Shown piece after piece: positions 1 to 53,878 of a stretch of 64,000 bases of DNA (position 1 is the first letter of the stretch; the number at the start of each line of letters is the position of its first letter). The stretch is from NCBI RefSeq assembly GCF_001194135.2, contig NC_068984.1, forward strand, positions 137,057,323 to 137,121,322. Reading direction: 5' to 3'. The translations under genes were made by a program, and so were the position numbers. Under the pieces are notes generated by a model that made no database searches, was not told where the DNA came from, and worked only from the letters and a program-made list of their open reading frames with translations. Source of the stretch: Octopus bimaculoides. Lineage: Eukaryota.

Positions 1-587
1 TATATATAACATGAAATATTCAGCTCTTTAAAGTTTATGACCAAATAACAACAAAATAAATATAGAAATAAAAACTTTATCTTTTTTTCTTTCAGATAAG
101 CATCTTAAAAGCAACAAAAAAAGGGGGGAGAAAAAAAATTCTCCTTGTATTTCTTTGAAGTTTAATACCAGATCTTTTGAATTTTGACTTTTCTGAATTT
201 CTCTTTTTTTTCTTATATCTATCTATATATACATATATATTTTTGGTAAATTCCCTAGGAAGCAAGAATCTCAGAAATGGTTAACATATTCTGTTGACCA
301 CCTTGCTCCGAGCATCAAACTACCACCAAAAAAAAAAAAATTAGATAAATAACTAAATATAAAGAAGAAAACAGTGTTAACCCTTTTATAGTCAATATCT
401 GCTCTCAAGGAAATTTAATGCCAGTTACATCAGTTATATATCATCGCTATCATGATTAGATGGCTATGATGTTGTCAAGGAGACAATGTAAAGTGACAAG
501 AAGAGAAATTAGATTTTGAGCCAGATATTTTAATATCTCAGCAACAGAGTTCCATTCTGTTGAGTTAAGAGAGTTCGTGTCTCATAG

Positions 588-1033
588 GTGCAGGCGTGGC
601 TGTGCGGTAAGAAGCTTGCTTCCCAACCACATGGCTCTGGGTTCGATCCCACTCTGTAGCATCCTGGGCAAGTGTCTTCTATTATAGCTTTGAGCTTGTG
701 AGTGGATTTGGTAGACAGAAACTGAAAAGAGCATGTTGTGGCTGTGTGGCAAGAAGCTTGCTTCCCAACCACATGGCTCTGGGTTCGATCCCACTGTATA
801 GCATCTTGGGCAAGTGTCTTCTATTATAGATTTGAGCTTGTCAGTGGATTTGGTAGACAAAAACTGAAAAGAGCATGTTGTGGCTGTGTGGTAAGTAGCT
901 TGCTTACCAACCACATGGTTTTGGGTTCAGTCCCTCTGCGTGGCACCTTGGGCAAGTGTCTTCTACTATAGCCTCAGGCCGATCAAAGCCTTGTGAGTAG
1001 ATTTGGTAGACGGAAAACTGAAAGAAACCCGTC
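588..1033 (+). mobile_element. Three tandem 5' heads (~142-bp period) of tRNA-derived SINE family A
   Basis: Repeated GTGGCTGTGTGGTAAG (A box), GGTTCGATCCC/GGTTCAGTCCC (B box), CCTTGGGCAAGT core-like motif and GGATTTGGTAGAC..AAACTGAAA. Confidence 0.85.
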
Positions 1034-1035
1034 GT

Positions 1036-1550
1036 TCAAATTCCGCCGAGGTCGACTTTGCCTTTCATCCTTTTGGGGTCAATAAATTAAGTACCAGTTA
1101 CGCACTGGGGTCGATGTAATCGACTTAATCCCTTTGTCTCTCGTTGTTTGTCCCCTCTATGTTTAGCCCCTTGTGGGTAATAAAGAAATAAGAAATGTTA
1201 GCACGCTGAGCNNNNNNNNNNGCCTTTCATCCTTTTGGGGTCAATAAATTAAGTACCAGTTACGCACTGGGGTCGATGTAATCGACTTAATCCCTTTGTC
1301 TCTCGTTGTTTGTCCCCTCTATGTTTAGCCCCTTGTGGATAATAAAGAAATAAGAAATGTTAGCACGCTGAGCAAAATGCTTAGCGGTCTTTTGTGTGTC
1401 TTTATGTTCTGAGTTCAAATTCTGCCGAGGTCGACTTTGCCTTTCTTCCTTTTGCGTCCGATAAATTAAGTACCAGTTGTGTACTGGGGTCAATCTAACT
1501 GACCGGTCCCCTCCCCAAAAATTTTGGGCCTTGTGCCTAGAGCAGAAAAG
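1036..1550 (+). mobile_element. tRNA-derived SINE family B copies, partly duplicated across a 10-N gap
   Basis: GTTCAAATTCCGCCGAGGTCGACTTTGCCTTTCATCC...AAGTACCAG motif recurs at 27065, 47390, 50718 and 59692. Confidence 0.85.
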
Positions 1551-2490
1551 AATATATGTAACTTCAATAGCTGAGAGAGACCAAGTGAGCTACAAGCTGG
1601 ATATGAACTCAGAAATCCTAGGCAACTAAAATAGATGATATAAAACATACAACACATTCACTGTCTGCTGTCCATGCCAACCGCATTGACCTAACCTCAT
1701 ACTCTACTAAAACATGATATATTTGACAGATTCTTCTGGTAATTCCTACTGGAACAATTTCATAGAAACAATACAGCTTCACTCTAAGCCAAAAACTGCT
1801 ATAGGAATAGTAAAATTACATCAACAGTATCTAAAGTATAGTTTAATCACATCAACTCCACTTCAATTCCACGCAGAGGGAAACTTGGTCCAACTATCTC
1901 ATCATTTGTCCTCACGTTTATACAAGAATATTGGAAATAAAAAAAAAATTAACAAAAACAGTTAACTATTCAAAGCAGCACCAAGTTTTGGTAAATAGCA
2001 GATGCTAATGTATTTAACTTTTGAAGAATGTCAATAAACCACATCTGGCTGGATATCAACAGATAAACAGAAGTCGAGAGCTGTACATTAGAAATAGGAG
2101 AATGTTATGACAACAGGTACATGTACATGTGCATATGCACAGACATGCATACACATACATATATTTAAGTGTATGTATATATGTATGTACATCAATCTAT
2201 CTGCCTATCTATCTATGTGTATATGAATATGTTTCTGTGTGTGTGTGTGAGCGTGCAAGATAAGAATGAGTATGAGATAAAATATATGTGTACGTGTGAA
2301 TGCGTATGCATATCTAAGTACGTGCGACTGTCTGATGCAATGCTATTGTGATGGATGGCTGTTTGTAAGAGTGCACATATGAATGGGCATGAGTGATTAT
2401 GCAGGTGAATATTTGTACATGCATAAGTACACATCTATATGCAACGTCTCTAATAGCATGTGTGAGTGTGCATAAATGCGAATAATATGA

Positions 2491-2543
<53 letters not shown>

Positions 2544-3016
2544 AGCACGTAGGCAAGTGACTATGTGTAAGTATATCTATTACTATAAAATGTGCCAGGA
2601 TGTATAGACGTATGTGCAGATGCACTTGTGTGCAATTGTGATTGAGTGAGGGAGGGGGGGGGAAAGAAAGCACGAGATATATTTTCCAGCACATAACGGA
2701 TTATTATAGAGAAATGGTAGGCTGACATTGTTCTGCTTGCCAAAAACTTACCCAAATTAATAGGGCTGTCAAAGAAAGCTAAAGGCACCTTCACATGCTG
2801 AGATTGTGCCAATGCAACATAGTTTCATTTCAATAACTTTTACATGCATGTATATACATGCATGTATATACATGCATATAAATATATACACATATACAAA
2901 CACACGCACACACACACACACACACACACAATATATATATATAGACACATTTTGATACAGTTTTACATATTCATATATATATTTACTTGTAATCGAATAT
3001 ATATATATATATATAT

Positions 3017-3068
<52 letters not shown>

Positions 3069-3328
3069 ACACACACACATATATATATATACTCATATGC
3101 AAACGTATATGTACTGATGCATATTTCTATATTTATAAGAACATGCAAGAATTAGATCATAGCATTGGCCAACCAATGAATTTCAATGGCGTCTAAAGCA
3201 GACATGCATTTATTCAATATGGAGAACTTTTATCATTTATCGTTCACAGTCTAAGCACAGTAATAGCAGCAGCAGCAGAGGTGGTGATGGTGGAGGTGGT
3301 GGTGGTGGTGGTGGCAGCGGCGGCGGCT

Positions 3329-3374
<46 letters not shown>

Positions 3375-3800
3375 CAGTGGTAGCAGCAGCAGCAGTACAA
3401 CAACAACCAGAACAAGTTTGATTCCCTGATGGAGATCCAATTCAGAAACACAAAATCTGGCCACCACCACTCTCCAGCATTCCTGTCCTATTACTCAAAT
3501 GGTGCTTTTTACGTGCCACCAGCTCAGGAGCCAGTCGGGCGGCACTGGCAACAACCATACTCGAATGGTGCTTTTTACGTTCCACCAGCATGGATGCCAG
3601 TCAGGCGGCACTGGCATCAGCCACGACAACAACTTCACTTGACTCAACAGGTCCTCGCTAGTACAGTTTATTGCCCAATGATTGAAGGGTACTCTTAAAT
3701 GGGCTGGTTATGCTGCACTAGCATAGGCCATTGTTATGATCTCACTTGGGACTGAACCCAGAACCATGTGGTTCGTAAGCAAGCTACTTACCACACACAC

Positions 3801-3848
<48 letters not shown>

Positions 3849-4033
3849 ATATATATAAATATAGAATAGTGGTACAAGGCACCAATGTTTACTGGAAATA
3901 GCAGTCGATAATTTTATGACGCTAGAGTAAAGCTTCATTGTATATATTCTGGCAAAGATGTGTGTGGGCAGCAAACATAAAAAATTTCATCTTACCTCTA
4001 GGAAAAACATTAGATAAATGTACAACCCAGAAT

Positions 4034-4119
4034 CAGATAATCTAGTACCTAGGTTTCAGACTCTTCAAATACGTTTGTTATCGTAAATTTGATTAGTCTT
4101 CTTCAGCTAGGTTTACCTG
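4034..4119 (-). ncRNA. Type-I hammerhead ribozyme motif, intronic, sense to PNPT1
   Basis: Minus strand reads CAGGUAA-AC-CUAG [CUGAAGA] AGACU...AGUCU [GAAA] CCUAGG [UA] CUAG-A-UUAUCUG. The core is intact. Stem I is 4 bp plus 7 bp, stem II is 5 bp plus an extension, and stem III is the palindrome ACCUAGGU. Predicted cleavage after GUA, between 4046 and 4045. Confidence 0.8.
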
Positions 4120-4308
4120 GACAATATTTCAAATGTTACTACATCAGTGCCAGTGTACTTGCCTAAAAGCCTAGCCGTTAACAGAACCGAGAACAGTGAA
4201 AAAATTTTCAATGAAAAATATCAAATATTGCAATACAAATGTATTACTTATCAATGATATATCTAACAATATCATGATTAAAAAGTAAAATAGAATTCTT
4301 TTCTTTAC

Positions 4309-4405
4309 CTTGTATTTGTGTCAAGAATTTGATTTCTAAAGATCTCCTTGCATATAGCACCAAAAGACTGCACCAGAGCACCCTGTTCAGTATCAGGGTA
4401 TGTTT
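4309..4405 (-). CDS. PNPT1: PNPT1 exon (97 nt): [33 protein letters not shown]
   Basis: Acceptor tctttttcag|AAACA, donor ACAAG|gtaaag; aligns with [33 protein letters not shown]. Confidence 0.94.
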
Positions 4406-6185
4406 CTGAAAAAGACCAAAAAGGAAAGGCATCAAGAAAACATCATCCATCTTACATCAAGATAAAATCCAAAAAGACGAAAACCATAGTTGAAATTCTC
4501 AAATATGTGTTGAAGCCATCGAGGCTGAAATGTCGAGAGAAAACCTCACTGATGCAACAAACTGATATAAGTATGTGTTGAGTACACTTAAACAGTATCA
4601 AGACTAACATGAGAAACTATTATCAATGACTACAAGTATGTAAGTAAGTATTGTCTCTTAAGTCCAAGGACTCATACGGCTGGTTATCTGGTTTCTATGG
4701 TGCATAAAGTGACTGAGATCACAACCAAGATGTCAATCTGTTGTTGGGTTAACCATTTACAGTTGAGTGGACTGGGGCAATGTGAAATGAAGTATTTTCC
4801 TCAAGAACTGCCCAGTCTGGGAATTGAAACTACAGCCTTGTGATCTGGAGTGCAACACTCTAACTTCTAAGCCAGTGGTTCCTTAAACTTTTGTGGGCTG
4901 CCGCCCTCTTGGCACCAGTGCCATATTCCTAGCACCCCTGTACCAACTCACCACCAAAAACATAGACCACTTTCTGCAGCAAATTCAAAGCAACTGCTTT
5001 TCACAAATAAAACTTAACCTAACTGACCCATTATTTTGTTGTTTTTGACATTGATCTCCCCCTTTTGACCACACTATTATTGCACCCACTTTTCTTAGGA
5101 AGGGCATCCAGCTGTAGAAACCATGTTAAATCAGACTGAAGTCTAGTGCTGCCCCTCAGCTTACTAGCCTTGGTCAAACCGTCCCAACCCATGCCAGTAT
5201 GGACAACGGACATTAAATGATGATGATGATGACAACATATATATATATATAGGCGCAGGAGTGGCTGTGTGGTAAGTAGCTTGCTTACCAACCACATGGT
5301 TCCAGGTTCAGTCCCACTGCGTGGCACCTTGGGCAAGTGTCTTCTACTATAGCCTCGGGCTAACCAAAGCCTTCTGAGTGGATTTGGTAGACGGAAACTG
5401 AAAGAAGCCCGTCATATATATATGTATATATATATATATATGCGAGTAAAAATAAATACAAAAAAGGTGGGTTTTTTTGTNNNNNNNNNNNNNNNNNNNN
5501 NNNNNNNNNNNNNNNNNNNNNNNNNNNNNNNNNNNNNNNNNNNNNNNNNNNNNNNNNNATATACAATATAAAATAAAATAAAATAAAAATGGATGGCACC
5601 ATGAAAGAAAGTATTGAATGTAGATGAAATATTGAGTGTTCAATATAAAGGATCAAATATATAAATATATAAATATAAATATATATATATAAAGGCGACT
5701 CGAGTTTCAGGGCTATTTCCCTTCGTCATGGCCGGTATGACAGACATATGTGTGTTTGTGTGTCTGTATTTGTCCCCCCAACATCGCTTGGTGCTGGTGC
5801 TGGTGGTGTTCACGTCACTCTTGCTAAGCACTGATTATGAACCCCACAAGCTCTAACTCACAGAGGTGTGGTGCTTCAGATGACTGAGGCCTGAGGCAGT
5901 GGAGCATCGATGCATTTAGTCAAGGGGTTCAGTCCTTAATGCAAAGCTCACCGTATCTCTCAATTTCCAACCTTTAAGAACAACAGGTAGCTTCCTAAAT
6001 TCAAAGCTGCATGATTTTATTCCTGTTGCTGTTGTTATTTTTAACATCATTATTACTACATTATTATTATTATTATTATTATCATTATTATTATTATTAT
6101 TATTATTATTGTCTCCCTCGTGCTTCGCCCTGATGGCAAATAAATGAAATCATTATTATTATCATTATTCTTATTCTTCTTCTTC

Positions 6186-6219: not shown

Positions 6220-7222
6220 CAAAAAGAAATAGAGAGCTTCTAACTGAAAAATACTTTGCATTTAACAGCACAATGCATGCAAATGTTGAAATTTACAAAA
6301 TTCATCTAAATTCATAGCATCACTGCAGAAAATTGCACAAATATTTACCAAAATTTATACATAAAAAAAAAAAAAACAACAATGATGATATTGATGATAA
6401 TAATAAATTGACAAGGAAACGAATAATAAGCGAATGCGTAGATATACATATTGTTATGTAAACAACTCCCTCATTGAAAATCAAATCAAATTGCTACAAC
6501 CGAACATGTAAAGACAATGAATATTGGCGAAGAGAAACAAGGAGGAGAAAAGAGAGGTAAAAAGCATAAAAGTAGACATTAAGATATCCATCCACCTGCC
6601 CCCTCCACCTACACCGTCACCACTGTCGCCACTGGCGCCGCTGCAATCGGCTTGAACTGAAACCTGAGTGAAAAATCTAAAATTACGTATTCATGGTAAA
6701 TGATAGAATATAACAGTAAAAGAAGCCAAATTTTACAACAGCTTGTCAAAATGGGCAAATGCCAGAGCCCTCGAAAGTTGTCTCCTGATTCAATTTCTCA
6801 AAATAGATTCTTCCATTTGGAGAGTCCACAATTCCAGCAAGTCACTTGCCAACCGGTAACTTTGCGAAAAATTTCTCTTTGTGCTGTGTGCTTGGATATA
6901 TACACATACTTATATACATACATACATACATACATACATAAATATATGTACATATACAGACATACATATACACATATATACTTATGCATATACAGACATA
7001 TGTACACACATATACACAAATATATATATATATATATACATACACGTGTACATACACATGTATATGCATGCGTATATAAATATATATATATATATACATA
7101 TATATACATATATATATACACATGTACATACACATGTATATGCATATATATACATATATATACATACACGTATATAAAAATACATACATAGACATGCATA
7201 AAAAGACATTTGTGTGTGTATG

Positions 7223-7260
<38 letters not shown>

Positions 7261-8159
7261 TGTACATACAAAGACATACATAAAAAAAGCATTCATATAC
7301 CTANNNNNNNNNNATATATATTCACATTGTATGTATGTATGTATATATGTATGTATGTATATATGTATGTATGTATATATGTATGTATGTATATATGTAT
7401 TTATGTATGTATGTATACACTCATCTGTAAGTATGCATGTACCTACGATTGCATGCAAGTGCATATATGCTTGCATGCCTAGCGCAGCCATGCATACAAA
7501 AACCCTGCGTAAATGCACACTGAAATCTGCATGTGTGCACACACGTGTTTACTTGAGAAGAAACGAAAGAAAGAAAGAAAGAATGAAAGAATACAGAAGT
7601 GTGCAAAAGCCAGAAAGAACACAAGAGGATGAAAGAAGCAAGAAGATTAAAGGTGGAATGATAAACTAATCATATTTGTTGGTCTCTGCTGTATTATTGG
7701 CAACAAGTTCAGAAATATTGAAGAGGTGAAACGACTAGGTGGCTCAGGTATTTGACTAGCAACACATAGGTCAGTGGTTCAAATGCTACTGCTGGCACTT
7801 TCTTCTGTCTTTGGGTAACACAATTCTTCTCACGTCAGTTTGCCAAAATGAATAACATACGAGATGTTCCGAAGAAACATTTCTTGCAAATAAATCGATG
7901 ACCTGTCTTAGAGAAGGTAAGGTTAGGGGGTCAGGGAATCAAGCAGAAGTTGCTGCCTGGACCGGCAAGTTTCATGTCAGAATTAAATCGGTTTGTAGGA
8001 ATGGATTCTCAAGTTCCTGTTAAATCAAAGTTAGCCTTTCATCCATCCATGAAGAATAAAGTAAATAGAACATAACTTGAAAGCAGGTGACTGAAACTTA
8101 GACTATATATTTGCATGTGTGTGTGTGTGTGTGTGTCTATATATATATGTGTGTGTGCA

Positions 8160-8191
<32 letters not shown>

Positions 8192-8876
8192 ACTGTGTAG
8201 AAGCCTATCATATATGTGTGTATGCACATGTGCATGCATATGTGTGCGCGTGTGTGTGCACCTATGTGTGCATGGGTGTCTGTGTCTGTTTGTCACCACT
8301 ACTTGAGAACCAATGTTGGTTTGTTTATGTCCACTAACTCAACATTCAGTGTGTGTGTGTGTGTGTGTGCGCATGTACATATGTGTGTATGTGCAAGTGT
8401 GCATGGGCGTCTGTGTCTGTGTTTGCTTCTCACCACTGCTTGACAACCGATGTTGGTTTGTTTATGTCTGCTAAGTCGGCATTCAGCGAAAGAGAGAGAG
8501 AGACAGATAGAGTAAGTACCAGTCTTAAAACAAGGTGGGGCTCCAGCATGGCTGCTGTCCAACGACTGCAACAAGTAAAAGATAAAAAAAAGGTCCTGCA
8601 GCAGAAACCAGTGTTTTGTCATCATCTCAGCACTGCAAGCTTGGTAAAAATGGATGCAACATGTGAGGCGGGGAGGAGGGGGGACAGACAGACAGACAGA
8701 CAGACAAAGAGACAGACCAAGAAGACAGTGAAGCCGACATTATGAAGCGAAAGAGCAGAGCACTAAGCTGGATGAATGAATGTGTAAAGGAAAACATGTT
8801 TAAAAAGAGAGAAATTATATGTTATAAGGTTACGCATTAACATTATGATATGGGAGGAGATAAAGGAAGAGGAGAT

Positions 8877-8913
<37 letters not shown>

Positions 8914-9083
8914 TGGGGAGAGAGAGGGAGAGAGAGAGAGAGAGAGAGGGAGAGAGTGGTTGTGGAGAGAGCTAGAAAGAGAGGTGAAACTAAAAGATTA
9001 TATATATGTAGAAGCATATGTTTATATGTGTATCTCTCACTCTCCCTTTATATATGTGTGTGTGTGTCAATGTGTGTGTGTGG

Positions 9084-9128
<45 letters not shown>

Positions 9129-9436
9129 CGCATATATATGATTACCTATTTATGTATATATATATGTGCATGTGTGTTTGCGTGTGTGTATGCATATATA
9201 TATATATATAGGTACATGTGTGTGTATACAGGTGTGTGTGTGTATGTATATATATATATATACACACACACATACATACATGATTACCTATTTATGCATA
9301 TATATGTGCATGTGTGTATTTATGCAGATATGTATATATATATATATATAAATATATNNNNNNNNNNNNNNNNNNNNNNNNNNNNNNNNNNNNNNNNNNN
9401 NNNNNNNNNNNNNNNNNNNNNNNNNNNNNNNNNNNN

Positions 9437-9502
<66 letters not shown>

Positions 9503-9893
9503 ATGATTACCTATTTATGTATGTTATGTATGTATGTATATATATATACATATATATATACATGTGTGTGTGTGTTTATATATGCACATGTTCATACATT
9601 TATCTACATACAAATACATATACACATGCACATACACGTGTTTACATATATGTATATCTACATATATACACACATAAATACGTACATGTATTTATGTACA
9701 TATAAGTATATGTGCGAACACACACGTACACACAAAGAGTGAGTGATTGAGAGAGAAAGCGTGTAGCATTTTACTGGAGGTTGCTGTAAAATGTAATCTT
9801 TTTTCTTGCGTATAGTTAAAGATTGGAGGAGAAGGACGAGGGGTTGTAAAAATGATATTACTGCCAGGTTGCAGCAGCAGCAGCAGCAGTAGC

Positions 9894-10110: not shown

Positions 10111-13100
10111 GTACGTGTGTGTCTATATGTGTGTGCTTAGTGAGTTTCATTTTTTTTTGTTTTTGTAGTTTATTTTTTTTAACCTGATTACATCTATTTT
10201 TAAAATCAACATTTTCAAAGGCATCACACCTGATATTGAGTACTATTTCTTCCATTTGTTGCCATTAGTAACTTGTGTATGTGTGGGTGGGTGTATCATC
10301 ATCATCATCATCATCATCATTTAACATCCACTTTTCTATGCTTTTATAGGTCAAACAGAATTTGTTGAGGCAAATTTTCTAGGGCCAGATGACCTTATCA
10401 CCAACCCACACTTGTTTCCAAGTATGATAAGATATATATATATAAAGACCCCACCCCCACCCTTCAGTCATGAATGACCATGGAATGCATCTAGAAAGTT
10501 CCCCTCTGATGCACAAGTCCAGGCAAGGTTGCTTATAGAAGACCAGCAGTCGCCCATGCATACCAACCTCCCATCTACACGCCACCGATGTTATCCAAGG
10601 GAAATGCAAAGACCGATACAGCTTGGCATCAATGATGTTGCAACTCATTTCTACAGCTGAGTGAACTGCAGCAACATGAAATAAAGTGTCTTGCTCAAGA
10701 ACACAACACATAGCCTGGTCCGGGAATCAAACTCACTACCTCATGACTGTGAACCCGATGCTTTAACCACTAAGCCATACAAAATATGTATACATTAGTA
10801 GCAGGCATTATATTTAGATGTTTAACAGGTAACTAGTTCTATCCTCTGACAAAATCAATCTTGTGCAAGAGGTGATAGCATGGAAAAAATGGATGTTAAA
10901 TGAACATTGCCCTGCCCAAATATTTGTTGCATATTGTCTGCAAAAAAAATATGGGCAGTGGAGAGGGAACCTGTATTCAGGCCCTAATGCTTAAAACAAA
11001 GTGATGTTTCTTCAAGGTGGTGTATTACATATAATTTCCATCCACCAAATTCACTCATAAAGCAATTGCCAGCCCAGGACTACAGTAGAGGACATATGGC
11101 CAAGGCACCAAGCAACGTGATTGAACCCAAAGCCATTTAGTTACAAAACTATGCCTGCACCTATAATCTTTATTCTTTAAAATTTTGAATTGATTGTATT
11201 ATGTTTTTCATAGCTCTTTCTCATGAGATTTTTTCCCCTTTTTCTTTTGTGACTCCCAACATATTAATTGGTTGCTATGAGCTTGTTTATGCTAGGGACC
11301 TGTTTTATTTCTGGTCGTTTGCTATCTTATTGAGATTTAGTTGCAAAAAAAAGAAAAAAAAACGAAAAATGTCTGTTGGGTTTGCTTTCTAATATTAAGC
11401 CACCTATCTAAGAGTTAAATGCCTAACTGAAAGGTTAGAGACCATAAAGTCTCTAAGCACTTTAACCTTGTGTCCTGTCAAGCGTAATTAGCCAGCAACA
11501 CCCACCACACTGCTCCTCACCACAAACAACAACAAGGATGTTATGTAAGGCCCAGAATAAAGTATCTTCTTGTTATTGTCGTAGTTGTTGTTTATGATGA
11601 TGATGCTGACTGAAGCAACAATCAGCCCATCTAGTTAATGCGTTGCTTGGAGTGACATCGTCATGGCGCAAAAATACTAACAAAACACTCCATAAAACGC
11701 AACACCTGCACAATTTCTCCAGTCAATCTTTTATTGCTTACTGCACCTCTTTACACTTCCAAACACGGAACTCCTCCAGCTGTGCTCTCTACAGATTTAT
11801 AGAAATTTTGCTAAATCTACCTTTTTCAATAAATTCTCAATAGCCCATACTGAAATCTTTCTCATTTACTGCCAGCAGACAAAAACAAAGGAGATAAGAG
11901 AAGATTTGTGCCTTAAACTGCCGGATTAACATTAGCATTTAAATTGGCCAAGCCTTGCCAAAATGTTCTACCTATTTTGGTATGTTTAAACTGGCCAAAT
12001 CTAGCCTCTCACACCTACCTTACAATGTCATTCTAAAAATAAACAATCACATCATTGAAATCTTGAATCATCATCATCATCATCGTCGTTTAACGTCCGC
12101 TTTCCATGCTAGCATGGGTTGGACGATTTGACTGAGGACTGGCGAACCAGATGGCTGCACCAGGCTCCAATCTGATCTAGCAGAGTTTCTACAGCTGGAT
12201 GCCCTTTCTAACGCCAATCTTGAATCTTTGAGATAATACATGATTAATTCAAAACAATGTAGATAAACAAATATTATATTTGACAGAATAATCTGAATGC
12301 TAAAGGATTATAAGGGAATACAGCAAAGAATCTTTATGCTATTTCTTTAAATCTTTGTGTGGTAAACCTAATCCAGTACCCGGTTTGACACCACCACCAC
12401 CAGGCATTTTGGGTACTTTTAGGAGAGAGTTCATCTTGACAAACTTTCAGGCCAGGCCCCCAGTTTAAGGACACCTCCCTACCACCCTTCCACCAGGTAT
12501 AGAGACCCTGTTAAGAATCTACTTAGCCAACAAACCAACTATGAAAACACATCTGAACTGTGCCTCACCATGATACCTATTTGCTAGAAGATGGCTGAAA
12601 TCATTGAAAGTTCATGTTGCTGTTTATTGTCTTTCTTTAAAACGGTGGTTCTCAACTATTTTTTTCCTATGGACCTTTTCCATTTTTATTTTACTCAACA
12701 GAGCCCTCACAGCCATTCAATGCTTAAAATAAATTTGCATTATATTTTTATAATTAAATATCATTAAGAATTGTATCAAAAAATTGTTAAAATATTTCGT
12801 GCATTGTAGAAATACAGTTAATTTACTGCACATAATTTTTAACAATTAAATCTTATATGAACCCCTAAGGGCCATGTGGACCTCAGTTGAGAACCACCGG
12901 CTTAAAATATTATATTAATTAGACTTTAGTGTTATGGCAATGACCATAAATCTCTCTTGGACTCACAGACTATGTGACAGTTATGTCATCAAACAGCAAG
13001 ATAGCACTCCGATCTCCTAACTCAGCTTAGTGTTTTGACTTTTTTATATGCTGGTTGTGGAGGAAGGGGTAGTGCCAATGGTCATTGCAGACCTTTCAAG

Positions 13101-14281
13101 ACTGGTAAGGTTGATGCTATAAATGTTCCATTTAAACTGTTGCAATTCAAGTTGCAACAAGAGCAGAGAGAGATTTCTGCATGTGCATTTGTAAGTCTTG
13201 CGGTTTTGGTTATCAATTCATCTATCATCATCATCGTTTAACGTCCGCTTTCCATGCTAGCATGGGTTGGACAATTTGACTGAGGACTGGTGGAGCCCGA
13301 AGGCTACACCAGGCTCCAATCTGATTTGGCAGAGTTTCTACAGCTGGATGCCCTTCCTAACGCCAACCACTCTGAGAGTGTAGTAGGTGCTTTTACGTGT
13401 CACCCACACAAAGGCCAGTCAGGCAATACTGGCAACGGCCATGCTCAAAATGGTGTATTTTATGTGCCACCCACACAAGAGCCAGTCCAGGGGCACTGGC
13501 AACGATCTCACTCGAAAGTTCTTACACATGCTGCGGGCACAAGTGCCAGAAAGGCGACGCTGGGCACAGGTGCCATCCCAATTTCACTTTTGCTTGCCTC
13601 AATAAGTCTATGATACATGTTTCCCAAGGCACCTATTATTATTACATTTGTTGCTATCAATGTTCTACGAAGGGCAGGATGTCGGGGTTAGTGCGGGGCC
13701 TCAAACACTGGACATAACCTGAGTGATGGGGAGGAGGAGACACATGTGGGTCACAAGTGCTTGAATATATTTATAAAACAGGTTTCTTTCAGTCTCCATC
13801 AACCAAATCCACTCACAAGGCTTTGGTCAACCCGAGGCTATAGTAGAACACACTTGCCCAAGGTACTCCACATTGGAATTGAACCTGAAACCTTGTAGTT
13901 GCAAAACAAGCTTCTTAACCACATAGCCATGCAAGCACCTATATGTAAGAACAAAAATTTTTTTTTTTTTCCCTTTTTATTTAATATTTTCCACTTTTTT
14001 CTTTTTTTTTTTTTCCTTATTTAAGATAACATAGTCCAGGTGGAGGTATTTGAATCATCAGCACTTCGGCTGGCAGATCAAAATCCTATCGAACTTGGCA
14101 ATCTCTGACACTTAAAAGTTTCGCAACACAACAGATATTACATGCGGCCTTTTTTATTCAAAAGATTACTTTATTAGCGAATGTACTTCCATTTAATGTA
14201 CTCCCTTTCTGCCTTTTACCGAACATTAATACCCCACATATCAACAATGCCATTGTTACAGGCACCACCACCACCACTACC

Positions 14282-14834: not shown

Positions 14835-15044
14835 TTTCTCCTTCTCAGTTGTTGTAATTGTTGTTTTTATATATTTGTGTTGTTTTGTCATCTTTTTTTT
14901 TTGTTTCGTTGGTTTGTTTGTTTGTTTGTTTTGCTTTTGTTGTTGTTGCAGTTGTTGTTGTTTTTCTGATATTCTCTTCTGCGGAGTTTATTTGTCTTCA
15001 GGAAACAGAAATTTCTCAATTGTTTTTATATTTATATTATTTAT

Positions 15045-15091
<47 letters not shown>

Positions 15092-17149
15092 TATAGGTAT
15101 GTATGTATGTATGTATGTATGTATGTATGTATACATATAAGTATATATGTATACATGTATGTATGTATATATATATGTATGTACGTACATATATGTATCT
15201 ATGTATATATCTATATATATACATACATATGTATGTAAACATATATGTATGTATGTGCATGTATGATTGTGTGTGCGTGTGCATGTGTGTGTGTGTGTGT
15301 GTTCTTATGTATGCAAGTATGCCTTTGTTTATAAAGTTAACATTATGTTGCTGATGTTGTTGCAATTCTTGTTGTTGTTGTTGTTACTCTTTTCACTGAA
15401 AGCTGACAATTTAGCAAACATTTATATCATAACTGTTCTTGTTGCAAAACATACAGAGATACCCATTTAAAAAATAGCCCATGGGTAAATTGGCTGAAAA
15501 TTACAGTAAAATGATTTAACATTGCTGAATTTTCAATGCAACATGAGTTTGAACAGAGATGCCTAACAATTTATCATCCACCAAAACAACAATACTTCTT
15601 GTTTTATGAATGAGGATGTTGTAGATATCTTTTCTCCTTCACTCCATCTTTCTATCTCTCTCTCTCTCTCTCTCTCTCACATTTTTTGTTCTTCTTTCCT
15701 TTTAACACTTTTGTAGTTGGAATTTTTGTATATCTATATTTTGCAGCATTTCTGTGGAAAGAGGAACAGCAAAAAGGAGAATGCTTTCCAATAATTAAAG
15801 AGGGGAGAGAAGGGGGGAAGGAACAAAATAGAGCGTAGGCAGGACAATATGAAATTAAGGAACGGCTTTTGAGACCAGCACAAGTAAGTGTTGAAAGCAA
15901 CCGGGATAACAATGAGCATAAATTTAATGTATTTACACAGCGGCGATAACTGACTGTGGGTATATGAGTAAGCAGTAACGTGTGATAAAAGTAAAATATA
16001 TCACAATGGGATGGCAGAGAATTATATATAAAAAAAAACAAAAGGAAAATATCATCATCGCTATCACCATCATCATCATCGTTAAATATATGCTTTTCCA
16101 TGCTGGCATGGGTTGGACAGTACAAGAGGAGCTGGCAAGCTAAAGGACTGTGCCAAGTTCACGTGTATGCTTTGACATAGTTTCTGTGGCTGGATACTTT
16201 TCCTACAGCCAACCACTTTACAGAGTGTACTGGGTGGTTTTTAAATGGCACCAATGAGATCGAATAATTTGAAAGACAAGCCATCTTAACTCAGCAGGGA
16301 AGTAATATTAAGAGGGGTGGCTTGGTACCAGGTGATGAGAGGCTGAAATATGACAGAGGGGCAGAAATACGATACAAAAAATTAAGATCAGGCTGGAAAA
16401 TGTTGGAGCAGGGCGTGGGGGGCCTTTTGCAGATTACAAACATGATAAAGATGTATTGAAAGATATATGATTGCGAAACCTTTAAAATCGTGTCATTATG
16501 GAAAAGCCAGGAGCAAAAGAAACAACAACAATAATAGTCCTGAGAGATGATAATGTGCTTTTTAAAGAAATGAAGAAATTATCCAAATATAAAGATCTAT
16601 CAAATGAGATAACTAGAATGTGGGATTTGAAAACAGCAACAAACATAATAATAATAGGTGCTTTGAGAATCATTAAAAAACATGTAGATGGATAGATACC
16701 CAAAACCCAAGAACTTACAAATGCACATGCAGAAAATAACTCTTGTATCTGCCATAAGCATTTTACATAGAGCACTTTCAATACAATAGATAACACAAAA
16801 GCAAAACAAAACATTACACATTTCCAAGGCACTTGGAGCTGTACTTTATGTATTGCAGTGAAAATGAGCAGGCAATAAAAATATGATAAATGAATAATAG
16901 TTTCAAACATAAGCACAAGGCAAGTAATTTTGGGGCTGGAATGGTGAATTATATCACTCTCTGTTGACTTCAGCATAATTTGAACTCAGTACATATAAGA
17001 CTGTAATAAAATACTGCGAAGCATTTTATCTGCCACTTTGATAATTCAGCCAATCTAGATTTTTAACATAGGAACAAGCCTGCAAATTTTGGGCAGTGAG
17101 TGTAAATGATTAATTCAACATCAGTACTTGACTGGCATTTGTTTTATTA

Positions 17150-17210: not shown

Positions 17211-20200
17211 GAAATTGAAAGTGACTTTAGCAAGATTTCAAATCAGAATGTAAAAGAAAGCAATTCGGGCATTTTGCCTGTCATTCTGCCTGATGCTTCC
17301 ATTCACCACCCCTTTATAATGATAATGATAGTGACAGTGATGATGATGTATTATTGGGATATTTTGACAAGAACCCTCCACAAAAATATTCCTTCGCTGC
17401 AAAGGAAAAGAGAGCCAAGTTGCTACGATGTAATTTTGGCAATATAATATAAGGCTTTCGAGAAAAGGTCACAGATGATAGAGAATGTTAGAATATCTAG
17501 GCAGTTGTATCCTAAAAGTTGAGAGTAGACTGTGACAAGCAAGGATGATGGGGTTGTGCTATTGTTTTACTTTGAATGCAATAGTGTGTCTGTAATTACA
17601 ATAAATACCTATTTAGCTGCATAACTGGATTGATAAAGCACTATAATTCCAAGTACAGAATGCAACAGTTTCCAGTCTAGCTGACAGTTTTTCAACTTAC
17701 AGATAGACACCTGTCATTTTGTCGGTAATAAGCTTATATATCATTTTGTAAGTACAATTTATTCTCTTCGATCTCCTTTTATACACATAGTTTTACATTT
17801 TCAAGTTGAAGTTTACAATGGATAGTTCTGGAAACTGGAAATATTTTTATAAAATTCTACATAAAAATATATTTGTTAAATTCTTTTTTTTTCCTTTTTG
17901 TCTTCAGTTCTTTTCACAAGCTAAAATTATACAATTTTTCTTTGTCTTTTTTTTTTGTAACAAAATTGAAAATTTACACCCTGTATCTAGTATTCCAAAT
18001 ATAATAAAAACACTCAATAAAAATAAAATTAAAGCAAGCAAAGTTAGTAAAATGATATTTAAAAAGAAAACAAAAAAATTGTTTTTGCTAAGGACTAAAA
18101 AAAAATTGCTTTAAAATTTTATAATAAACAGTTTACAAGGTACTGTTCTGCAGACCTGTCTAATCTATTCTGATGCGAGGGAAAATATTTTTAAAACTAC
18201 CAGCGAATATGATGATTGACAATAATTATAATTACACTATTTAAACATCATATTTATCACATAGCCTCTGACATTACAACGAACTAAAAATAATTAATGC
18301 AATGACTTTTAATGGCTGTTGCAAATCTTACACAAATAAAAATAAAATACTGTAGTTACAAGAAATCCATGATACTTGGTAAATGAATGGTTAAATATTA
18401 GACTACAGATTCAAATTATGCTTTGGTATTTCTAAAATTTTTACTTTTTTTCTAAGTCAGATAAACTGATTGATTGAAAATAAAATTTGGCACAGGGGAA
18501 TGTCAAAGGAATATGTGAAAATAACAGGAAAAAACACAAATAATGGGTGCAGTCATGCCCATCCCTTCATCAGTTGTCAATCAAATATCATCACAATTTT
18601 GACACTTTCTGATATTGTTCAGTCTGACAGCCTGAGCAACATAAGCTGCTGGGATATAAATGAGTGGACGTGCTAGATGGACAAAAGCAGAAGAAAAAAT
18701 GAAATAAATAAAATAATAAGAAAAGTCAAAGTGTGAGACTGAATAGTAAAAAAGACAAGTTATGAAGAGAACAGAAGTAATTATGTAAACAAAAGAAAGA
18801 AACAAGCAAGGACAGTAAGAACAAACACATATATGATAAACACCACAGACTGGGGGAAACCTGGAGACTTTCACACCTGAAGTAAAAGTTGGGTATTTTA
18901 TAAATCATTGCAAAGTGCAGTTCTATATTTAAGAGGTGAGGAAATATGTTCATTATTTACATTATTTACATTTGACGGATATTTGTCCTCATCTTGTTTG
19001 TTGTTAACACAACATTTTGGCTGATATACCCTCCAGCCTTCATCTGGTGTCTTGGGGGAAATTTTGAACCTGGGTTCTCATTCCTAAGGTATTTTTCGAT
19101 GTTCTTGTTATTATTATTATTATTATTATTCAGGTCACTGCCTGGAATCAAACTCGGAATCTTGGGGTTAACCACTACACCCATGGGCATATGGTGTAGT
19201 GGTTAAGAGCGCAGGCTACTNNNNNNNNNNNNNNNNNNNNNNNNNNNNNNNNNNNNNNNNNNNNNNNNNNNNNNNNNNNNNNNNNNNNNNNNNNNNNNNN
19301 NNNNNNNNNNNNNNNNNNNNNNNNNNNNNNNNNNNNNNNNNNNNNNNNNNNNNNNNNNNNNNNNNNNNNNNNNNNNNNNNNNNNNNNNNNNNNNNNNNNN
19401 NNNNNNNNNNNNNNNNNNNNNNNNNNNNNNNNNNNNNNNNNNNNNNNNNNNNNNNNNNNNNNNNNNNNNNNNNNNNNNNNNNNNNNNNNNNNNNNNNNNN
19501 NNNNNNTGGCATATTACCAGCCAATGTACGCCACTAGCCCAGAAGGAATATAAGAGATGCCACGACAATATAGCCAGGCTTATCCATTGGACACTTTGCA
19601 ACAAGTATGGACTTGACAGAGCAAAAAATTGGTACGACCATGAACCTGAAGGCATCGTTGAAAATAGAAATGCAAAGATCCTATGGGATTTTATGATTCA
19701 GTGCGACCATGAGATAGAGAATAGGAAGCTGGACATAGTCTTAATTGAGAAAGAAAACAAACTATGCTGGATCATAGATATAGCATGTCTAGCTGACAAC
19801 AAGATATGTGATAAGGAAGAAAGAAAAGTCGAGAGATATGATAGATTAGCTTGGGAAGTTAAGCAGTTGTGGTTGCTGAAAAAGGTAGCAGTAGTACCAA
19901 TAATTGTCGGAGCCCTGGGAACAGTAAGCAAAAATCTCGAGAAGTACGTGGAACAAATAGGGGCTGCAATAAGGGTGGAGCACTTACAGAAAACAGCACT
20001 GTTTGGAACCGCTCGAATACTCCAAAAGGTGCTCGAAAAACAAGAGGTGTTACCTTAGTTCACTGGTAGTGAACAGCTGATACTGTAGTACATCTCCAGC
20101 ATTAGAAACTGTACAAAGGCAATAATAATAATAATTATACAATGGAGGACATGCTAGACTATTTCACGTCTGTAACGCAAACACAGTCATGATGGTATTT

Positions 20201-23200
20201 TAGCCGAAAGTTGTAAGTCAACTTGCATGTCACACACGAAATCATTTAGTGCTTAACACTTACAGTAACTAAATTTCCTAAACCTGTAATCTATTTGAAC
20301 AATCCGAGAGTTTAACATGTCCATGCTGACAATCGATAATAAATGTTCAAATAGATTTGGTAAAAAGAAAAATACAGAAAATTATTTGAATTATTTGCTA
20401 CTCACCTTTCACTTTCTCCAGAACATCACTTCTAATTACACTGATAGCTTCATCTCGTGATATCTAAAACAATGTTTAAAAACTTCAATTAATTATTGAT
20501 ACAGTTGAATAATATAATATTTAACTATGAAGGAGCTTCTATGCAGTTGTTGGACCTGCTACAAACAACAGACAAATCTCCTTCAAATTACACCCTACTG
20601 CCTACGATGAGGTAAGACATAATCTTCTACTATAATAATACTCTTGTGTTTTGCTCTGTCACAACATATGAATGAGAAAGGAGGGGGGGGATTGATGAAT
20701 AAGGAAGGAAGGGGTGATGGCAAACTGGTACTCTGTGTGAGTATATGTGTGTGTAAAAGGGAGGTATGTGAATGTTTGTGTGTGTGTGTTTGTGCAATGG
20801 AAGTGGGATGGTGAGCATACAAAGCTCAAAAGAATAATCAAACAGCGTTTCAACTCTGTGTGAGTATATGTGTGTATGTATGTGCATGTACAAGGGAAGT
20901 ATGTGAACGCTTGTATGTGTGAACCAGCGTTCTTTCAGTAACAAATGATTGATGTCACATCTCAAAAGACAACCACTAGATAACATTGGTAAGTGTATTA
21001 ATTTGATTTGCCATCCATATTTTTATATAAAATACTACAATTAGCCATCATTTTTGACAGTACGGGATCAGCTAGTAAATAATATAATTTTCAATATCAC
21101 CACCGTAACATAAACTTTTCTGTGGTTGCATATGTCGGATGGAGTTTAATGAGGCAAATTTTCTGTGACCAGATGCCTTTCCAATTGCCAACCCTCACTT
21201 GTTTCCAAGCAACATAATGCTCCCTCATTTACAACTAGCATGTGATATCAAGTTAAGAAGGCACAAACATACACACACATCATCCTCATTATCAGTTAAT
21301 GTTTGTTTTCCATGCTGGCATGGGTTGGACGGTTTAACCAAAAATGGTAAGCTGGGGAGCTGCATCATCATCATCATCATCCAGTCCTTTACATTACGTT
21401 AACTGGGGAGGTCTTTTACGTTAACTGGGGTGGCCAGATCTACTTCAATGCCATAGCAACCAAGCTTTGGGCTGGTTGGTGCCCATTCTCTTTTGCTATC
21501 ATGAGGTTTTTCTAGAGCTGGATTTTCTACGGGGAGCATGCCCTTGCTTACCTCCAACCTCAGTTTCTAGACACTTGACTGTGGCCATGCTGGAGCACCA
21601 CCTTTAGTCGAGCAAATCGACCCCAGGACTTATTCTTTGTAAGCCGGGTACTTATTCTATCGGTCTCTTTTGCCGAACTGATAAGTTACGGGGACGTAAA
21701 CACACCAGCATCGGTTNNNNNNNNNNATATAAATATATATATATAAATATATATATATACATATATACGACAGGCTTCTTTCAGTTTCCGTCAACCAAAT
21801 CCACTCACAAGGCTTTGGTCAGCGCGAGGCTATAGTAGAAGACACTTGCTCAAGGTGCCACGCAGTGGGACTGAACCCGGAACCATGTGGTTGGTATGCA
21901 AGCTACTTACCACACAACCACTCCTGCGTCTATATATATATATATTTCTTTCAGCCACTTCTAAACTCTTCTTTGTTTTCTATCATTAAAAATAAATTTT
22001 AAGAAATTCTCACTGACGTGATTTGCAAAGCAACTTGTTATTTAAGTTGCTTTCAAAATTTGATGAATGCAAAGACACTAGAATTTCTTTTCAATGTCGT
22101 TTCGTAAATCAACACCAACAATTTCTGTCTGCCAAAGAATCTTATCAAACGGACAAATTCCTTCATATGATAATAATCAAGTAATGTACATTAAAAAATG
22201 CTAATTTATTAAACGTTCTGTCAAAGATAACATAAAAATTTACAGGAAGTATGGAAAATAAAAGAAAAGACATATTTGCAACTGTGATATCAAGATGTTA
22301 ACTTGCAAAATTTGACTGCTAAATATGTTCTCTTTCATCAGAATATTCAGTACATTTTTGCATGATGTACAGAAGAATTATATATTATTTAAGAAATTAT
22401 GCATGCAGAACACACGCATGTATGTATGTATATGCAAGAAGAATAAGTATGCATATGCATATGTTTGTGTGTGTGTGTGTGTGCGTGTGTGTGTACCTTT
22501 CCTTCATTGGACACTAAACTCTGCTTGCGAAGACCTGTTGAGGCAAGTGNNNNNNNNNNTGTGTACCTTTCCTTCATTGGACACTAAACTCTGCTTGCGA
22601 AGACCTGTTGAGGCAAGTGAAATCGAAACTGAACCAAATTCGATGACTAGCACCCATGCCAACCTCTCCTTCATTGGCTTGACTGGCCTTCGTGTCAGTG
22701 GCACGTAAAAGCACCCATTCTTCTATTTAGTAAAACTGTAGAAATAGAATTAGAGAAACTCTGCCAAATCAGACTGGAGCCTGGTGTTGCCATCCGGTTT
22801 CACCAGTCCTCAGTCAAATCGTCCAACCCATGCTAGCATGGAAAGCGGACGTTAAACGATGATGATGATGATGATGAAGTAAAGCAGTGTGGTATACTTA
22901 TAATGAAAAGAAGGAAGCTAGTGTTTCTTGATGGTAAAGTAATGAAAAACATTGAAAAGATTGGATACAAGTGTTTGGGAGAACACTGGAACCTTGCCAA
23001 AGAGCAAAATGATTGAAATAGAGAAACTATTTGGAAAAGAATACTAAGCCAGAGAGGAAGATGATGTGGAGGACATCAAATTACATGTACTAATCGCCAT
23101 CATCATTTTACATCCACTTTTCCATGCTGTCATGGGTTAGATGTGTCTCAGTGTCCCACTACCCTTCACAGCTCACAACATCTGGTGGACATCGTCGTCG

Positions 23201-28200: not shown

Positions 28201-28647
28201 ACACATACATATACACGAGAGCAGTTCAGAAAATGATGCAAATATATGTGTGTGAGGGTACATGACCTAGTGGCTAGGATGTTGCACTCACAATTGGAAG
28301 CTCATGGTTTCAATTCCTGCTCAGGAAACACTGATTTGATGGAGGGAGTGAGCTAATGTAGAATATATACATTTGAACACAATAAAAAGATCATTTGAGT
28401 AAGTCGTTCACAAAAACTGAACTCTCGTACGTTGTCTTCGACAAGAGATTCCATCATGTATGTATGATATCACAGTATCACAGAATCAACCAGCCCATCC
28501 AATGTTGTTATATACCTTGCTGGTCACAGTGCGCTTCCACTTCTGTTTTTATTGCACCATTCTTATCAATCTTGACCGAAATTGCTTCTCTAAATCATCT
28601 TCTCATTGTTGTGGAGGCTTTCCAAGAGGCCTTTTCTAATCTCTTGG

Positions 28648-28682
<35 letters not shown>

Positions 28683-43432: not shown

Positions 43433-43487
<55 letters not shown>

Positions 43488-49304: not shown

Positions 49305-49416
49305 GATGCTACAGAGGCAGTAAGAGATAAGCTTTCAGTGAGTAAAACCAGCATTAAGGGCCCAGTTCTTGCAACAAGTTTCTTTTAGTTTATTTATATA
49401 CTCCCTAAGGAAATCA

Positions 49417-53844: not shown

Positions 53845-53878
<34 letters not shown>

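What the first reader, a model, noticed from the sequence alone, without database searches (positions are those of the whole stretch)
4034..4119. Intact type-I hammerhead ribozyme in a PNPT1 intron, on the pre-mRNA strand
Seen directly: the minus strand reads CAGGUAA-AC-CUAG-CUGAAGA-AGACU-AAUCAAAUUUACG-AUAACAAA-CGUAUUUGAAG-AGUCU-GAAA-CCUAG-GUA-CUAG-A-UUAUCUG. All conserved core nucleotides are present (C3 U4 G5 A6 G8 A9, G12 A13 A14, A15.1-U16.1) with a permitted GUA triplet. Stem I is CUAG/CUAG plus CAGGUAA/UUAUCUG across an AC/A internal loop. Stem II is AGACU/AGUCU extended by UCAAA/UUUGA and UACG/CGUA. Stem III is the 8-nt palindrome ACCUAGGU. Established knowledge: minimal type-I hammerheads with short palindromic stem III are typical of Penelope-like elements and cleave as dimers, and conserved intronic hammerheads are known in amniotes (HH9 in RECK, HH10). 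Inference: I could not assign the flanks to any repeat family in this window, and the cut site is only 263 nt into the intron after the 97-nt exon. It could be a domesticated ribozyme that cuts the nascent transcript of a ribonuclease gene and so affects splicing or transcript yield. I know of no report of this in cephalopods. Caveat: three CUAG copies and a repeated AACCUAG allow misfolding.
Basis: partly seen in the sequence, partly recalled or inferred. Interest (0 to 1): 0.92.

Follow-up and report, generated by a model that had tools for sequence, protein, structure and literature searches.

The report
Solitary transposon-type hammerhead motif in PNPT1 intron
A real hammerhead self-cleaving RNA motif lies in an intron of the PNPT1 gene on the transcribed strand, but it has the dimer-dependent design typical of Penelope-like mobile elements and, as a lone copy, is predicted to fold into an inactive shape, so it is most likely an ordinary transposon remnant and not a domesticated regulator.

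Summary
All 11 core hammerhead nucleotides are present, with A15.1-U16.1, a GUA cleavage triplet and type-I topology. Stem III is the 8-nt palindrome ACCUAGGU. The motif lies 263 nt into an intron of at least 4.3 kb, after a 97-nt exon of a PNPT1 orthologue, on the sense strand. It is not a chance match: it is the only descriptor hit in the window, and 40 Mb of random sequence gave none.

"Intact and possibly domesticated" goes beyond the evidence:
- The 10.1-11.1 pair is A-U, not the conserved G-C.
- No Rfam hammerhead model matches, even at E<=10.
- No loop-loop tertiary contacts are recognisable.
- The monomer's active fold is 5.4 kcal/mol worse than a rod-like misfold (P(active) about 0.004).
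- The homodimer MFE is the classic double hammerhead, but the predicted trans Kd is about 1 mM, and there is no second copy in the window.

This dimer-only design matches Penelope-like-element and retrozyme hammerheads, which are mostly solitary and often intronic. Copy number and orthologous conservation could not be tested, because no cephalopod data were reachable. Verdict: a new member of a known kind. Domestication is unsupported.

The parts
4034..4119 (-). Complete type-I hammerhead motif (86 nt)
   Evidence: Sequence read. Only descriptor hit in the window. None in 40 Mb of random sequence.
4100..4106 (-). Core box CUGAAGA (C3 U4 G5 A6 A7 G8 A9)
4058..4099 (-). Long helix II. It has 14 bp in three segments (AGACU/AGUCU, UCAAA/UUUGA, UACG/CGUA), a 2x2 internal loop, a UU bulge and the 8-nt loop AUAACAAA. 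The 10.1-11.1 pair is A-U.
   Evidence: The MFE and every ensemble keep this hairpin, with P 0.93-0.98.
4055..4057 (-). Core G12 A13 A14
4047..4054 (-). Helix III palindrome ACCUAGGU (A15.1...U16.1). As a monomer it gives at most 2 bp plus a CUAG tetraloop and adds 0 kcal/mol. In a dimer it forms an 8-bp intermolecular helix.
4045..4046 (-). Predicted cleavage site: GUA(4046) | C(4045), 263 nt downstream of the 5' splice site
   Evidence: Cleavage itself is not shown.
4107..4119 (-). Helix I 5' strand: CAGGUAA, loop AC, CUAG. The segment ACCUAG (4112-4107) pairs with CUAGGU (4052-4047) in the misfold.
4034..4045 (-). Helix I 3' strand: CUAG, A, UUAUCUG
4309..4405 (-). 97-nt PNPT1 exon encoding (K)[31 protein letters not shown](R). 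It aligns to human PNPT1 residues ~287-315.
   Evidence: Splice sites. Pfam PNPase domain is a weak match. PDB 3U1K alignment.
1..4308 (-). Host intron. It runs off the window, and no downstream PNPT1 exon (DGR/HGS motif) lies within 1-4308.
3796..3863 (-). (CA)n microsatellite about 170 nt 3' of the motif. It may be the insertion-site context, since PLEs favour microsatellites. Beyond it lies an unrelated SINE-like repeat at 3492-3800.
   Evidence: PLE microsatellite bias from PMC8557442. The link to this motif is inference only.

Best explanation
This is a solitary copy of a mobile-element-type hammerhead ribozyme, of the kind carried in the terminal repeats of Penelope-like retroelements and their non-autonomous 'retrozyme' derivatives. 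It was left by an insertion, probably 5'-truncated, into a long PNPT1 intron in the sense orientation.

In the parent element two copies on one tandem transcript pair through the 8-nt palindrome ACCUAGGU. That pairing builds a shared helix III and two active sites (a double hammerhead), which process the element's RNA. A single copy instead collapses into a rod, in which ACCUAG of helix I pairs with CUAGGU of helix III.

In the PNPT1 pre-mRNA there is one copy only. It is therefore expected to cleave slowly or not at all and to be removed with the intron, with little or no effect on PNPT1 expression.

Shown: the motif, its position and strand, the fold energies, and the absence of a partner in 64 kb. 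Inferred: the mobile-element origin, the inactivity and the lack of function.
For: - The motif is real and not chance.
[quoted passage not shown] Most such copies are solitary, have low activity and are dimer-dependent (PMC4209133; PMC6765202; PMC6155905).
- The homodimer MFE (-49.2 kcal/mol) is exactly the double hammerhead.
- In a simulated tandem with 20-50 nt linkers, the double hammerhead is the MFE, with P 0.57-0.70.
- The solitary copy has an active fold of -16.9 against an MFE of -22.3 kcal/mol, and P(active helix I) <=0.004 in all flank contexts tested.
- The predicted trans Kd is about 1 mM.
- No second copy, tandem unit or inverted partner lies nearby.
- Hammerhead motifs are numerous in a cephalopod genome: 235 in the giant squid, where Penelope elements are also present.
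- In Xenopus, 42-44% of retrozyme copies are intronic.
Against: - No other copy of the motif or its flanks exists in the 64-kb window.
- No PLE RT/GIY-YIG ORF is adjacent.
- Assignment to a repeat family therefore rests on architecture alone.
- All 25 helix base pairs are intact. That fits a young insertion but equally fits selection.
- The PLE-typical extra nucleotide before G10.1 and the G10.1-C11.1 pair are absent.
- Nearest-neighbour energies ignore tertiary structure, proteins and Mg2+, so some monomer activity cannot be excluded.
Confidence: 0.7

Rival explanations
1. Domesticated intronic ribozyme. On this reading the hammerhead is conserved in cephalopod PNPT1 and cleaves the nascent pre-mRNA 263 nt into the intron. 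That would tune splicing or transcript yield of the ribonuclease gene, by analogy with the amniote RECK/HH9 and HH10 hammerheads.
For: - It is in sense orientation in the intron and close to the 5' splice site.
- The core is fully intact and all helices are mismatch-free.
- It is unique within 64 kb.
- There is precedent for domesticated intronic hammerheads derived from retroelement ribozymes (PMC6155905).
Against: - There is no evidence of conservation, because this could not be tested.
- The design is dimer-dependent, with a dominant inactive monomer fold and a predicted trans Kd of about 1 mM.
- The HH9/HH10 ribozymes show conserved loop-loop tertiary interactions (PMC6155905). None is recognisable here. 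They are also, from my own recollection, monomer-competent.
- The 10.1-11.1 pair is A-U.
- There is no match to Rfam HH9, HH10 or Hammerhead_1.
- Sense orientation has a prior of roughly 50% for any insertion.
Confidence: 0.07
2. Weakly active by-product. The motif is a transposon relic, as in the best explanation, but the monomer, or occasional pairing between two nascent transcripts, gives low-level cleavage. That would slightly lower PNPT1 pre-mRNA yield without being selected for.
For: - The catalytic core is complete.
- Some metazoan hammerheads with 1-2 bp helix III retain low monomer activity, and host factors have been invoked for PLE hammerheads (PMC4209133).
Against: - P(active) is about 0.004.
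- The misfold and the active helix I become available within about 10 nt of each other during transcription, so no kinetic window favours the active fold (inference).
- From my own knowledge of exon-tethering experiments, slow intronic ribozymes do not disturb co-transcriptional splicing.
Confidence: 0.18
3. Chance resemblance in AT-rich intronic DNA, with no ribozyme ancestry.
For: - No Rfam hammerhead hit even at E<=10.
- The 10.1-11.1 pair is non-canonical.
- A loose descriptor would give of the order of a thousand chance hits in a Gb-scale genome (rate).
Against: - The strict descriptor gave 0 hits in 40 Mb of random sequence.
- The candidate also has 7 more helix I pairs and 9 more helix II pairs, plus an 8-nt palindrome that makes the dimer MFE a perfect double hammerhead.
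- Extrapolating, I estimate well under 0.01 such chance matches per Gb-scale genome.
Confidence: 0.03

Closest known systems
Hammerhead ribozymes of Penelope-like elements (min-HHR and variants with a small palindromic helix III; Cervera & de la Pena 2014; Lunse, Weinberg & Breaker 2016/2017)
   Same: - Type-I topology.
- Short palindromic helix III that can only be completed by dimerisation.
- Long helix II and a 4-bp helix I with an ill-defined loop 1.
- No canonical tertiary contacts.
- Typically found as solitary motifs scattered through metazoan genomes.
   Different: - No PLE ORF or pLTR context is recognisable here.
- The usual unpaired nucleotide between A9 and G10.1 and the G10.1-C11.1 pair are replaced by an A-U pair followed by G-C.
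- Helix II is even longer: 14 bp, interrupted, against 6-8 bp.
- Helix I has an extra 7-bp closing stem.
Non-LTR retrozymes and satellite hammerheads of metazoans (newt satellite 2, axolotl, Mytilus, corals; Cervera & de la Pena 2020)
   Same: - Type-I hammerhead with a 1-2 bp helix III capped by a palindromic tetraloop.
- Double-hammerhead mechanism in tandem transcripts.
- Mussel families also lack the loop 1-loop 2 contacts.
   Different: Retrozymes are tandem repeats of about 170-400 bp. Here there is a single motif, with no tandem or partial repeat in the flanks.
Conserved intronic hammerheads of amniotes (HH9 in RECK; HH10 in the gene given as CTCL in PMC6155905; a further motif in DTNB of birds and reptiles)
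   Same: Sense-strand hammerhead inside an intron of a protein-coding gene, thought to derive from retroelement ribozymes.
   Different: - Those are defined by deep orthologous conservation, and they show conserved loop-loop contacts. From my recollection they are also monomer-competent.
- Neither property is shown here. The predicted monomer fold is inactive, and Rfam HH9/HH10 do not match.

Membership tests
Hammerhead ribozyme (any type) | Conserved core C3 U4 G5 A6 N7 G8 A9 and G12 A13 A14 | tested here: met
   CUGAAGA at 4106-4100 and GAA at 4057-4055.
Hammerhead ribozyme (any type) | A15.1-U16.1 pair and NUH cleavage triplet | tested here: met
   A at 4054, U at 4047, triplet GUA with A17 at 4046.
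Hammerhead ribozyme (any type) | Three helices abutting the core | tested here: met
   Complementarity is present for helix I (4+7 bp), helix II (5+5+4 bp) and helix III (2 bp as monomer, 8 bp as dimer).
Hammerhead ribozyme (any type) | Highly conserved G10.1-C11.1 pair | tested here: not met
   Here it is A10.1-U11.1, followed by G10.2-C11.2. Conservation is stated in PMC4209133.
Hammerhead ribozyme (any type) | Match to curated Rfam covariance models (Hammerhead_1, _II, _3, HH9, HH10) | tested here: not met
   No hit at gathering score. No hit at E<=10 on 361 nt, and none among the listed hits for the whole window. The 42-nt helix II insertion probably explains the miss, but that is inference.
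Hammerhead ribozyme (any type) | Active three-way-junction fold is thermodynamically accessible | tested here: not met
   For the monomer: -16.9 against an MFE of -22.3 kcal/mol, with P <=0.004. The feature is met only for a dimer or tandem.
Hammerhead ribozyme (any type) | Site-specific self-cleavage | not testable with these tools
   Needs in vitro transcription or end-mapping.
PLE / retrozyme dimeric type-I hammerhead | Type-I topology with a very short, palindromic helix III/loop 3 | tested here: met
   ACCUAGGU palindrome. The monomer helix III contributes 0 kcal/mol.
PLE / retrozyme dimeric type-I hammerhead | Two copies can form a double hammerhead | tested here: met
   The cofold MFE is the double hammerhead. 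In a tandem construct P is 0.57-0.70. This is in silico only.
PLE / retrozyme dimeric type-I hammerhead | Unpaired nucleotide between A9 and G10.1 | tested here: not met
   The A after A9 pairs with the U before G12.
PLE / retrozyme dimeric type-I hammerhead | Located in a pLTR next to an RT/GIY-YIG ORF, or in short tandem repeats | tested here: not met
   No repeat of the flanks in the window, no tandem unit and no adjacent RT/EN ORF. This is expected for the majority class of solitary truncated copies.
PLE / retrozyme dimeric type-I hammerhead | Belongs to a multi-copy family with covarying helices in the same genome | not testable with these tools
   No cephalopod or other eukaryote genome was reachable. 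Viral contigs gave 0 hits. Metagenomes gave 1 chance hit without helices. The protein collection lacks this locus.
Domesticated intronic hammerhead (HH9/HH10-like) | Orthologous conservation of the motif in the same intron across species | not testable with these tools
   No orthologous loci could be fetched.
Domesticated intronic hammerhead (HH9/HH10-like) | Sense orientation within an intron of a conserved gene | tested here: met
Domesticated intronic hammerhead (HH9/HH10-like) | Monomer-competent fold with conserved loop 1-loop 2 contacts | tested here: not met
   The misfold dominates. Helix II is 14 bp long, so its loop cannot sit opposite a loop 1. No Rfam HH9/HH10 match.

The most novel reading that the evidence does not exclude
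The motif is a lineage-specific domesticated ribozyme, fixed in the PNPT1 intron of cephalopods. It would cleave the nascent transcript, perhaps switched between the rod and the active fold by a protein or by pairing of sister transcripts. That would couple ribozyme activity to the output of a mitochondrial RNA-degrading enzyme, and it would be the first conserved intronic hammerhead outside amniotes.
Probability: 0.06. Interest if true: 0.75.

Novelty: new member of a known kind. Interest (0 to 1): 0.3.

Why it matters
If it is only a relic, it adds one well-dissected example of how a dimer-dependent transposon ribozyme is silenced by its own alternative fold once it is stranded as a single copy inside a host gene. 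That may explain why such motifs are tolerated in sense orientation in introns. If it proved to be conserved and active, it would extend domesticated intronic hammerheads from amniotes to molluscs and link a ribozyme to control of an RNA-decay enzyme. The current evidence does not favour that reading.

Tried and rejected
- Rfam scans at gathering score and at E<=10 found no hammerhead family. The sub-threshold hits were microsatellite artefacts and two chance matches (Lacto-rpoB, Dicty Class I).
- A search for further copies in the window found none. I used exact and 3-mismatch patterns, blastn with word size 9, Smith-Waterman against the rest of the window, and strict and relaxed structural descriptors.
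- A test for tandem or inverted flank structure around the motif scored at the null level.
- The adjacent SINE-like repeat (3492-3800) was rejected as the carrier, because its roughly ten other copies lack the motif.
- Pattern scans of public collections gave 0 hits in viral contigs. They gave one metagenome hit (L001), which has neither helix I nor helix II and was rejected as chance.
- Attempts to fetch orthologous or allelic loci through proteins failed. The PNPT1 exon peptides found one distant Logan fragment only, and ten ORFs around the motif are absent from the protein collection.
- Full-text searches for hammerhead with octopus or cephalopod, and for the sequence strings themselves, found no report on this locus.
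- Two key papers (PMC2933863, PMC5785218) and the supplements of PMC4209133 and PMC8557442 are not held.
- I considered building a covariance model from remembered hammerhead sequences. I rejected it because it would rest on memory, not on data.
- I considered collapse of a tandem array by the short-read assembly. It is unlikely, because the nearest N gaps are at 1212 and 5481.

Full report
**1. Observation.**
Using RNA position i = 4120 - i, the parts are:
- Helix I 5' strand: CAGGUAA (4119-4113), loop AC, CUAG (4110-4107).
- Core CUGAAGA (4106-4100).
- A 42-nt helix II hairpin (4099-4058).
- G12 A13 A14 (4057-4055).
- The palindrome ACCUAGGU (4054-4047), holding A15.1 and U16.1.
- A17 (4046).
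- Helix I 3' strand: CUAG, A, UUAUCUG (4045-4034).

All 11 invariant core nucleotides are present, together with the A15.1-U16.1 pair and a permitted GUA triplet. The topology is type I.

**2. Host gene.**
The 97-nt exon lies at 4405-4309, with an ag acceptor and a gt donor. The putative cut site, between 4046 and 4045, is 263 nt into the following intron. Peptides from this exon and from three upstream minus-strand exons (about 48.8, 46.5 and 45.9 kb) match human mitochondrial PNPT1 (PDB 3U1K) at E=1e-27. The 97-nt exon aligns to human residues ~287-315 (Pfam support). No downstream PNPT1 exon lies in 1-4308, so the intron is longer than 4.3 kb. The host gene, strand and distances are therefore confirmed. 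The cephalopod origin of the window could not be verified.

**3. Chance.**
- A structural descriptor finds only this site on both strands of the window. It requires CUGANGA, helix II >=4 bp, GAAA, a 15.2-16.2 pair, UH and helix I >=4 bp.
- The same descriptor finds nothing in 40 Mb of first-order Markov sequence with the window's composition.
- A deliberately loose descriptor gives 6 hits per 20 Mb, or 0.04 per window. It requires helix I >=3 bp, allows an optional bulge and U3-A8, and accepts any palindromic helix III.
- The candidate also has 7 more helix I pairs and 9 more helix II pairs. Extrapolating from these rates (inference), I expect well under 0.01 matches of this quality per Gb-scale genome.

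The motif therefore descends from a real hammerhead lineage.

**4. Departures from a canonical, active hammerhead.**
- (a) The pair next to the core is A10.1-U11.1, not the highly conserved G10.1-C11.1 (conservation stated in PMC4209133).
- (b) No Rfam hammerhead model matches, whether at gathering score, at E<=10 on a 361-nt slice, or among the listed hits in the E<=10 scan of the whole window. The long helix II is the probable reason, but it is still a failed membership test.
- (c) Helix II is 14 bp long, so its loop cannot lie opposite a loop 1. No canonical tertiary contacts are recognisable.
- (d) Energetics. The active monomer fold scores -16.9 kcal/mol, and helix III contributes nothing to it. 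The MFE scores -22.3 kcal/mol. The MFE is a rod in which ACCUAG (RNA 8-13) pairs with CUAGGU (68-73), stacked on the outer helix I.
- (e) Ensemble. The probability of the active inner helix I is 0.004 in isolation and <=0.003 with 30-150 nt of native flanks. The competing strands emerge within about 10 nt of each other, so transcription order gives no kinetic advantage to the active fold (inference).

**5. What the design is for.**
The homodimer MFE (-49.2 kcal/mol) is precisely the double hammerhead. It has an 8-bp intermolecular helix III and two complete three-way junctions.

When two copies are joined in silico by 20-50 nt linkers, the double hammerhead is the MFE, with pair probability 0.57-0.70. 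With a 120-nt linker the probability is still 0.35.

In trans, the ensemble dimerisation free energy is only -4.2 kcal/mol, which gives a Kd of about 1 mM. That is far above any plausible concentration of nascent pre-mRNA.

The sequence therefore behaves as a switch. It is inactive as a single unit and active when two units lie on one transcript. The literature describes this logic for viroid, newt-satellite, retrozyme and Penelope-like-element (PLE) hammerheads (PMC4209133; PMC6155905; PMC6765202).

**6. Surroundings.**
- The stretch 3870-4750 is unique within the window.
- The flanks show no tandem or inverted similarity.
- The only other ACCTAGGT is 55 kb away, inside a LINE RT fragment.
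- No RT/GIY-YIG ORF is adjacent, and the exon lies only 190 nt upstream. Any parent element must therefore be truncated to a few hundred nt.
- A (CA)n microsatellite lies about 170 nt downstream on the same strand. PLEs are reported to prefer microsatellite targets (PMC8557442). This link is suggestive only.
- The neighbouring SINE-like repeat (3492-3800) has about ten other copies in the window. None of them carries the motif, so it is not the carrier.

**7. Comparison with known systems.**
The architecture fits the PLE hammerhead variants and the metazoan type-I retrozyme hammerheads:
- Short palindromic helix III.
- Long helix II.
- Mostly solitary copies and low activity.

It differs from them in three ways:
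- It lacks the unpaired nucleotide before G10.1.
- Its 10.1-11.1 pair is A-U.
- Its helices I and II are unusually long.

Such motifs number in the thousands in many invertebrate genomes. The giant squid paper reports 235 Rfam Hammerhead_1 loci, and Penelope elements are present in that genome (PMC6962438). In Xenopus, 42-44% of retrozyme copies are intronic (bioRxiv 10.64898/2026.07.22.740005).

The domesticated amniote hammerheads (RECK/HH9, HH10) are defined by deep conservation, and they show conserved loop-loop contacts. Neither property is shown here. From my own recollection they are also monomer-competent, whereas the predicted monomer fold here is inactive.

**8. What could not be tested.**
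Genomic copy number and orthologous conservation are the decisive discriminators, and neither could be tested. The reachable collections hold no cephalopod DNA. Viral contigs gave nothing. The single metagenome match lacks helices I and II. The protein collections contain neither this locus nor cephalopod PNPT1. Literature searches found no report of this locus.

**9. Verdict.**

The best explanation (confidence 0.7) is a solitary hammerhead of the PLE/retrozyme type, stranded in sense orientation in a PNPT1 intron. It is intact at the sequence level but trapped in an inactive fold for lack of a partner, with negligible effect on the host gene.

The rivals are:
- Low-level by-product cleavage without selection: 0.18.
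- Domestication: 0.07.
- Chance: 0.03.

Novelty: a new member of a known kind. Interest: 0.3.

Noticed in passing
window 3492-3800; also 12067-12244, 13216-13393, 23183-23360, 25314-25986 (inverted), 27594-27771, 30439-30853, 32948-33125, 38407-38772, 49413-49590, 54866-55125, 58077-58573: An abundant SINE-like repeat family, with a core of about 178 nt plus internal tandem subunits of about 65 nt, occurs ten or more times in 64 kb. ARAGORN finds no tRNA-like gene in the window.
   Followed up: partly
window 51193-50473 (-), 59310-59044 (-), 47467-46988 (-): Remnants of other mobile elements lie in the PNPT1 region, judged by eye from translations only. They are a mariner/Tc1-like transposase in two pieces, a LINE reverse-transcriptase C-terminal fragment, and a 160-aa retroelement-like ORF interrupted by an Asn run.
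   Followed up: no
window 2100-3100, 6880-7500, 8100-9730, 15040-15320, 28640-29710, 43440-43730 and others: About 250 sub-threshold Rfam hits (mir-297, mir-466, mir-3149, mir-1277 and others) all fall on (TG)n/(TA)n-type microsatellites. They are artefacts of low-complexity hairpins.
   Followed up: yes
window: 17 N runs, e.g. 5481-5558, 19221-19506, 39739-40084, 61113-61639: The window holds 2568 N in 17 gaps, typical of a short-read draft scaffold. No gap is adjacent to the hammerhead; the nearest are at 1212 and 5481.
   Followed up: yes
window 53724-54170: A long imperfect (GAT/GAC/GGT)n block with a 9-15 nt periodicity. It could be an acidic coding repeat or a plain microsatellite.
   Followed up: no
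window ~48815-48618, 46634-46326, 45925-45806 (-): Upstream PNPT1 exons (RNase PH C-terminal domain and alpha-helical domain) lie about 41-44 kb 5' of the 97-nt exon. The gene therefore has very long introns. At least one small exon between 45.8 kb and 4.4 kb was not located.
   Followed up: partly
L001 3948-3989 (-) (metagenome contig Ga0307471_100009137): This is the only public-collection match to CTGANGA...GAAACCTAGGTHCTAG. It lacks complementarity for helices I and II and is a chance hit.
   Followed up: yes
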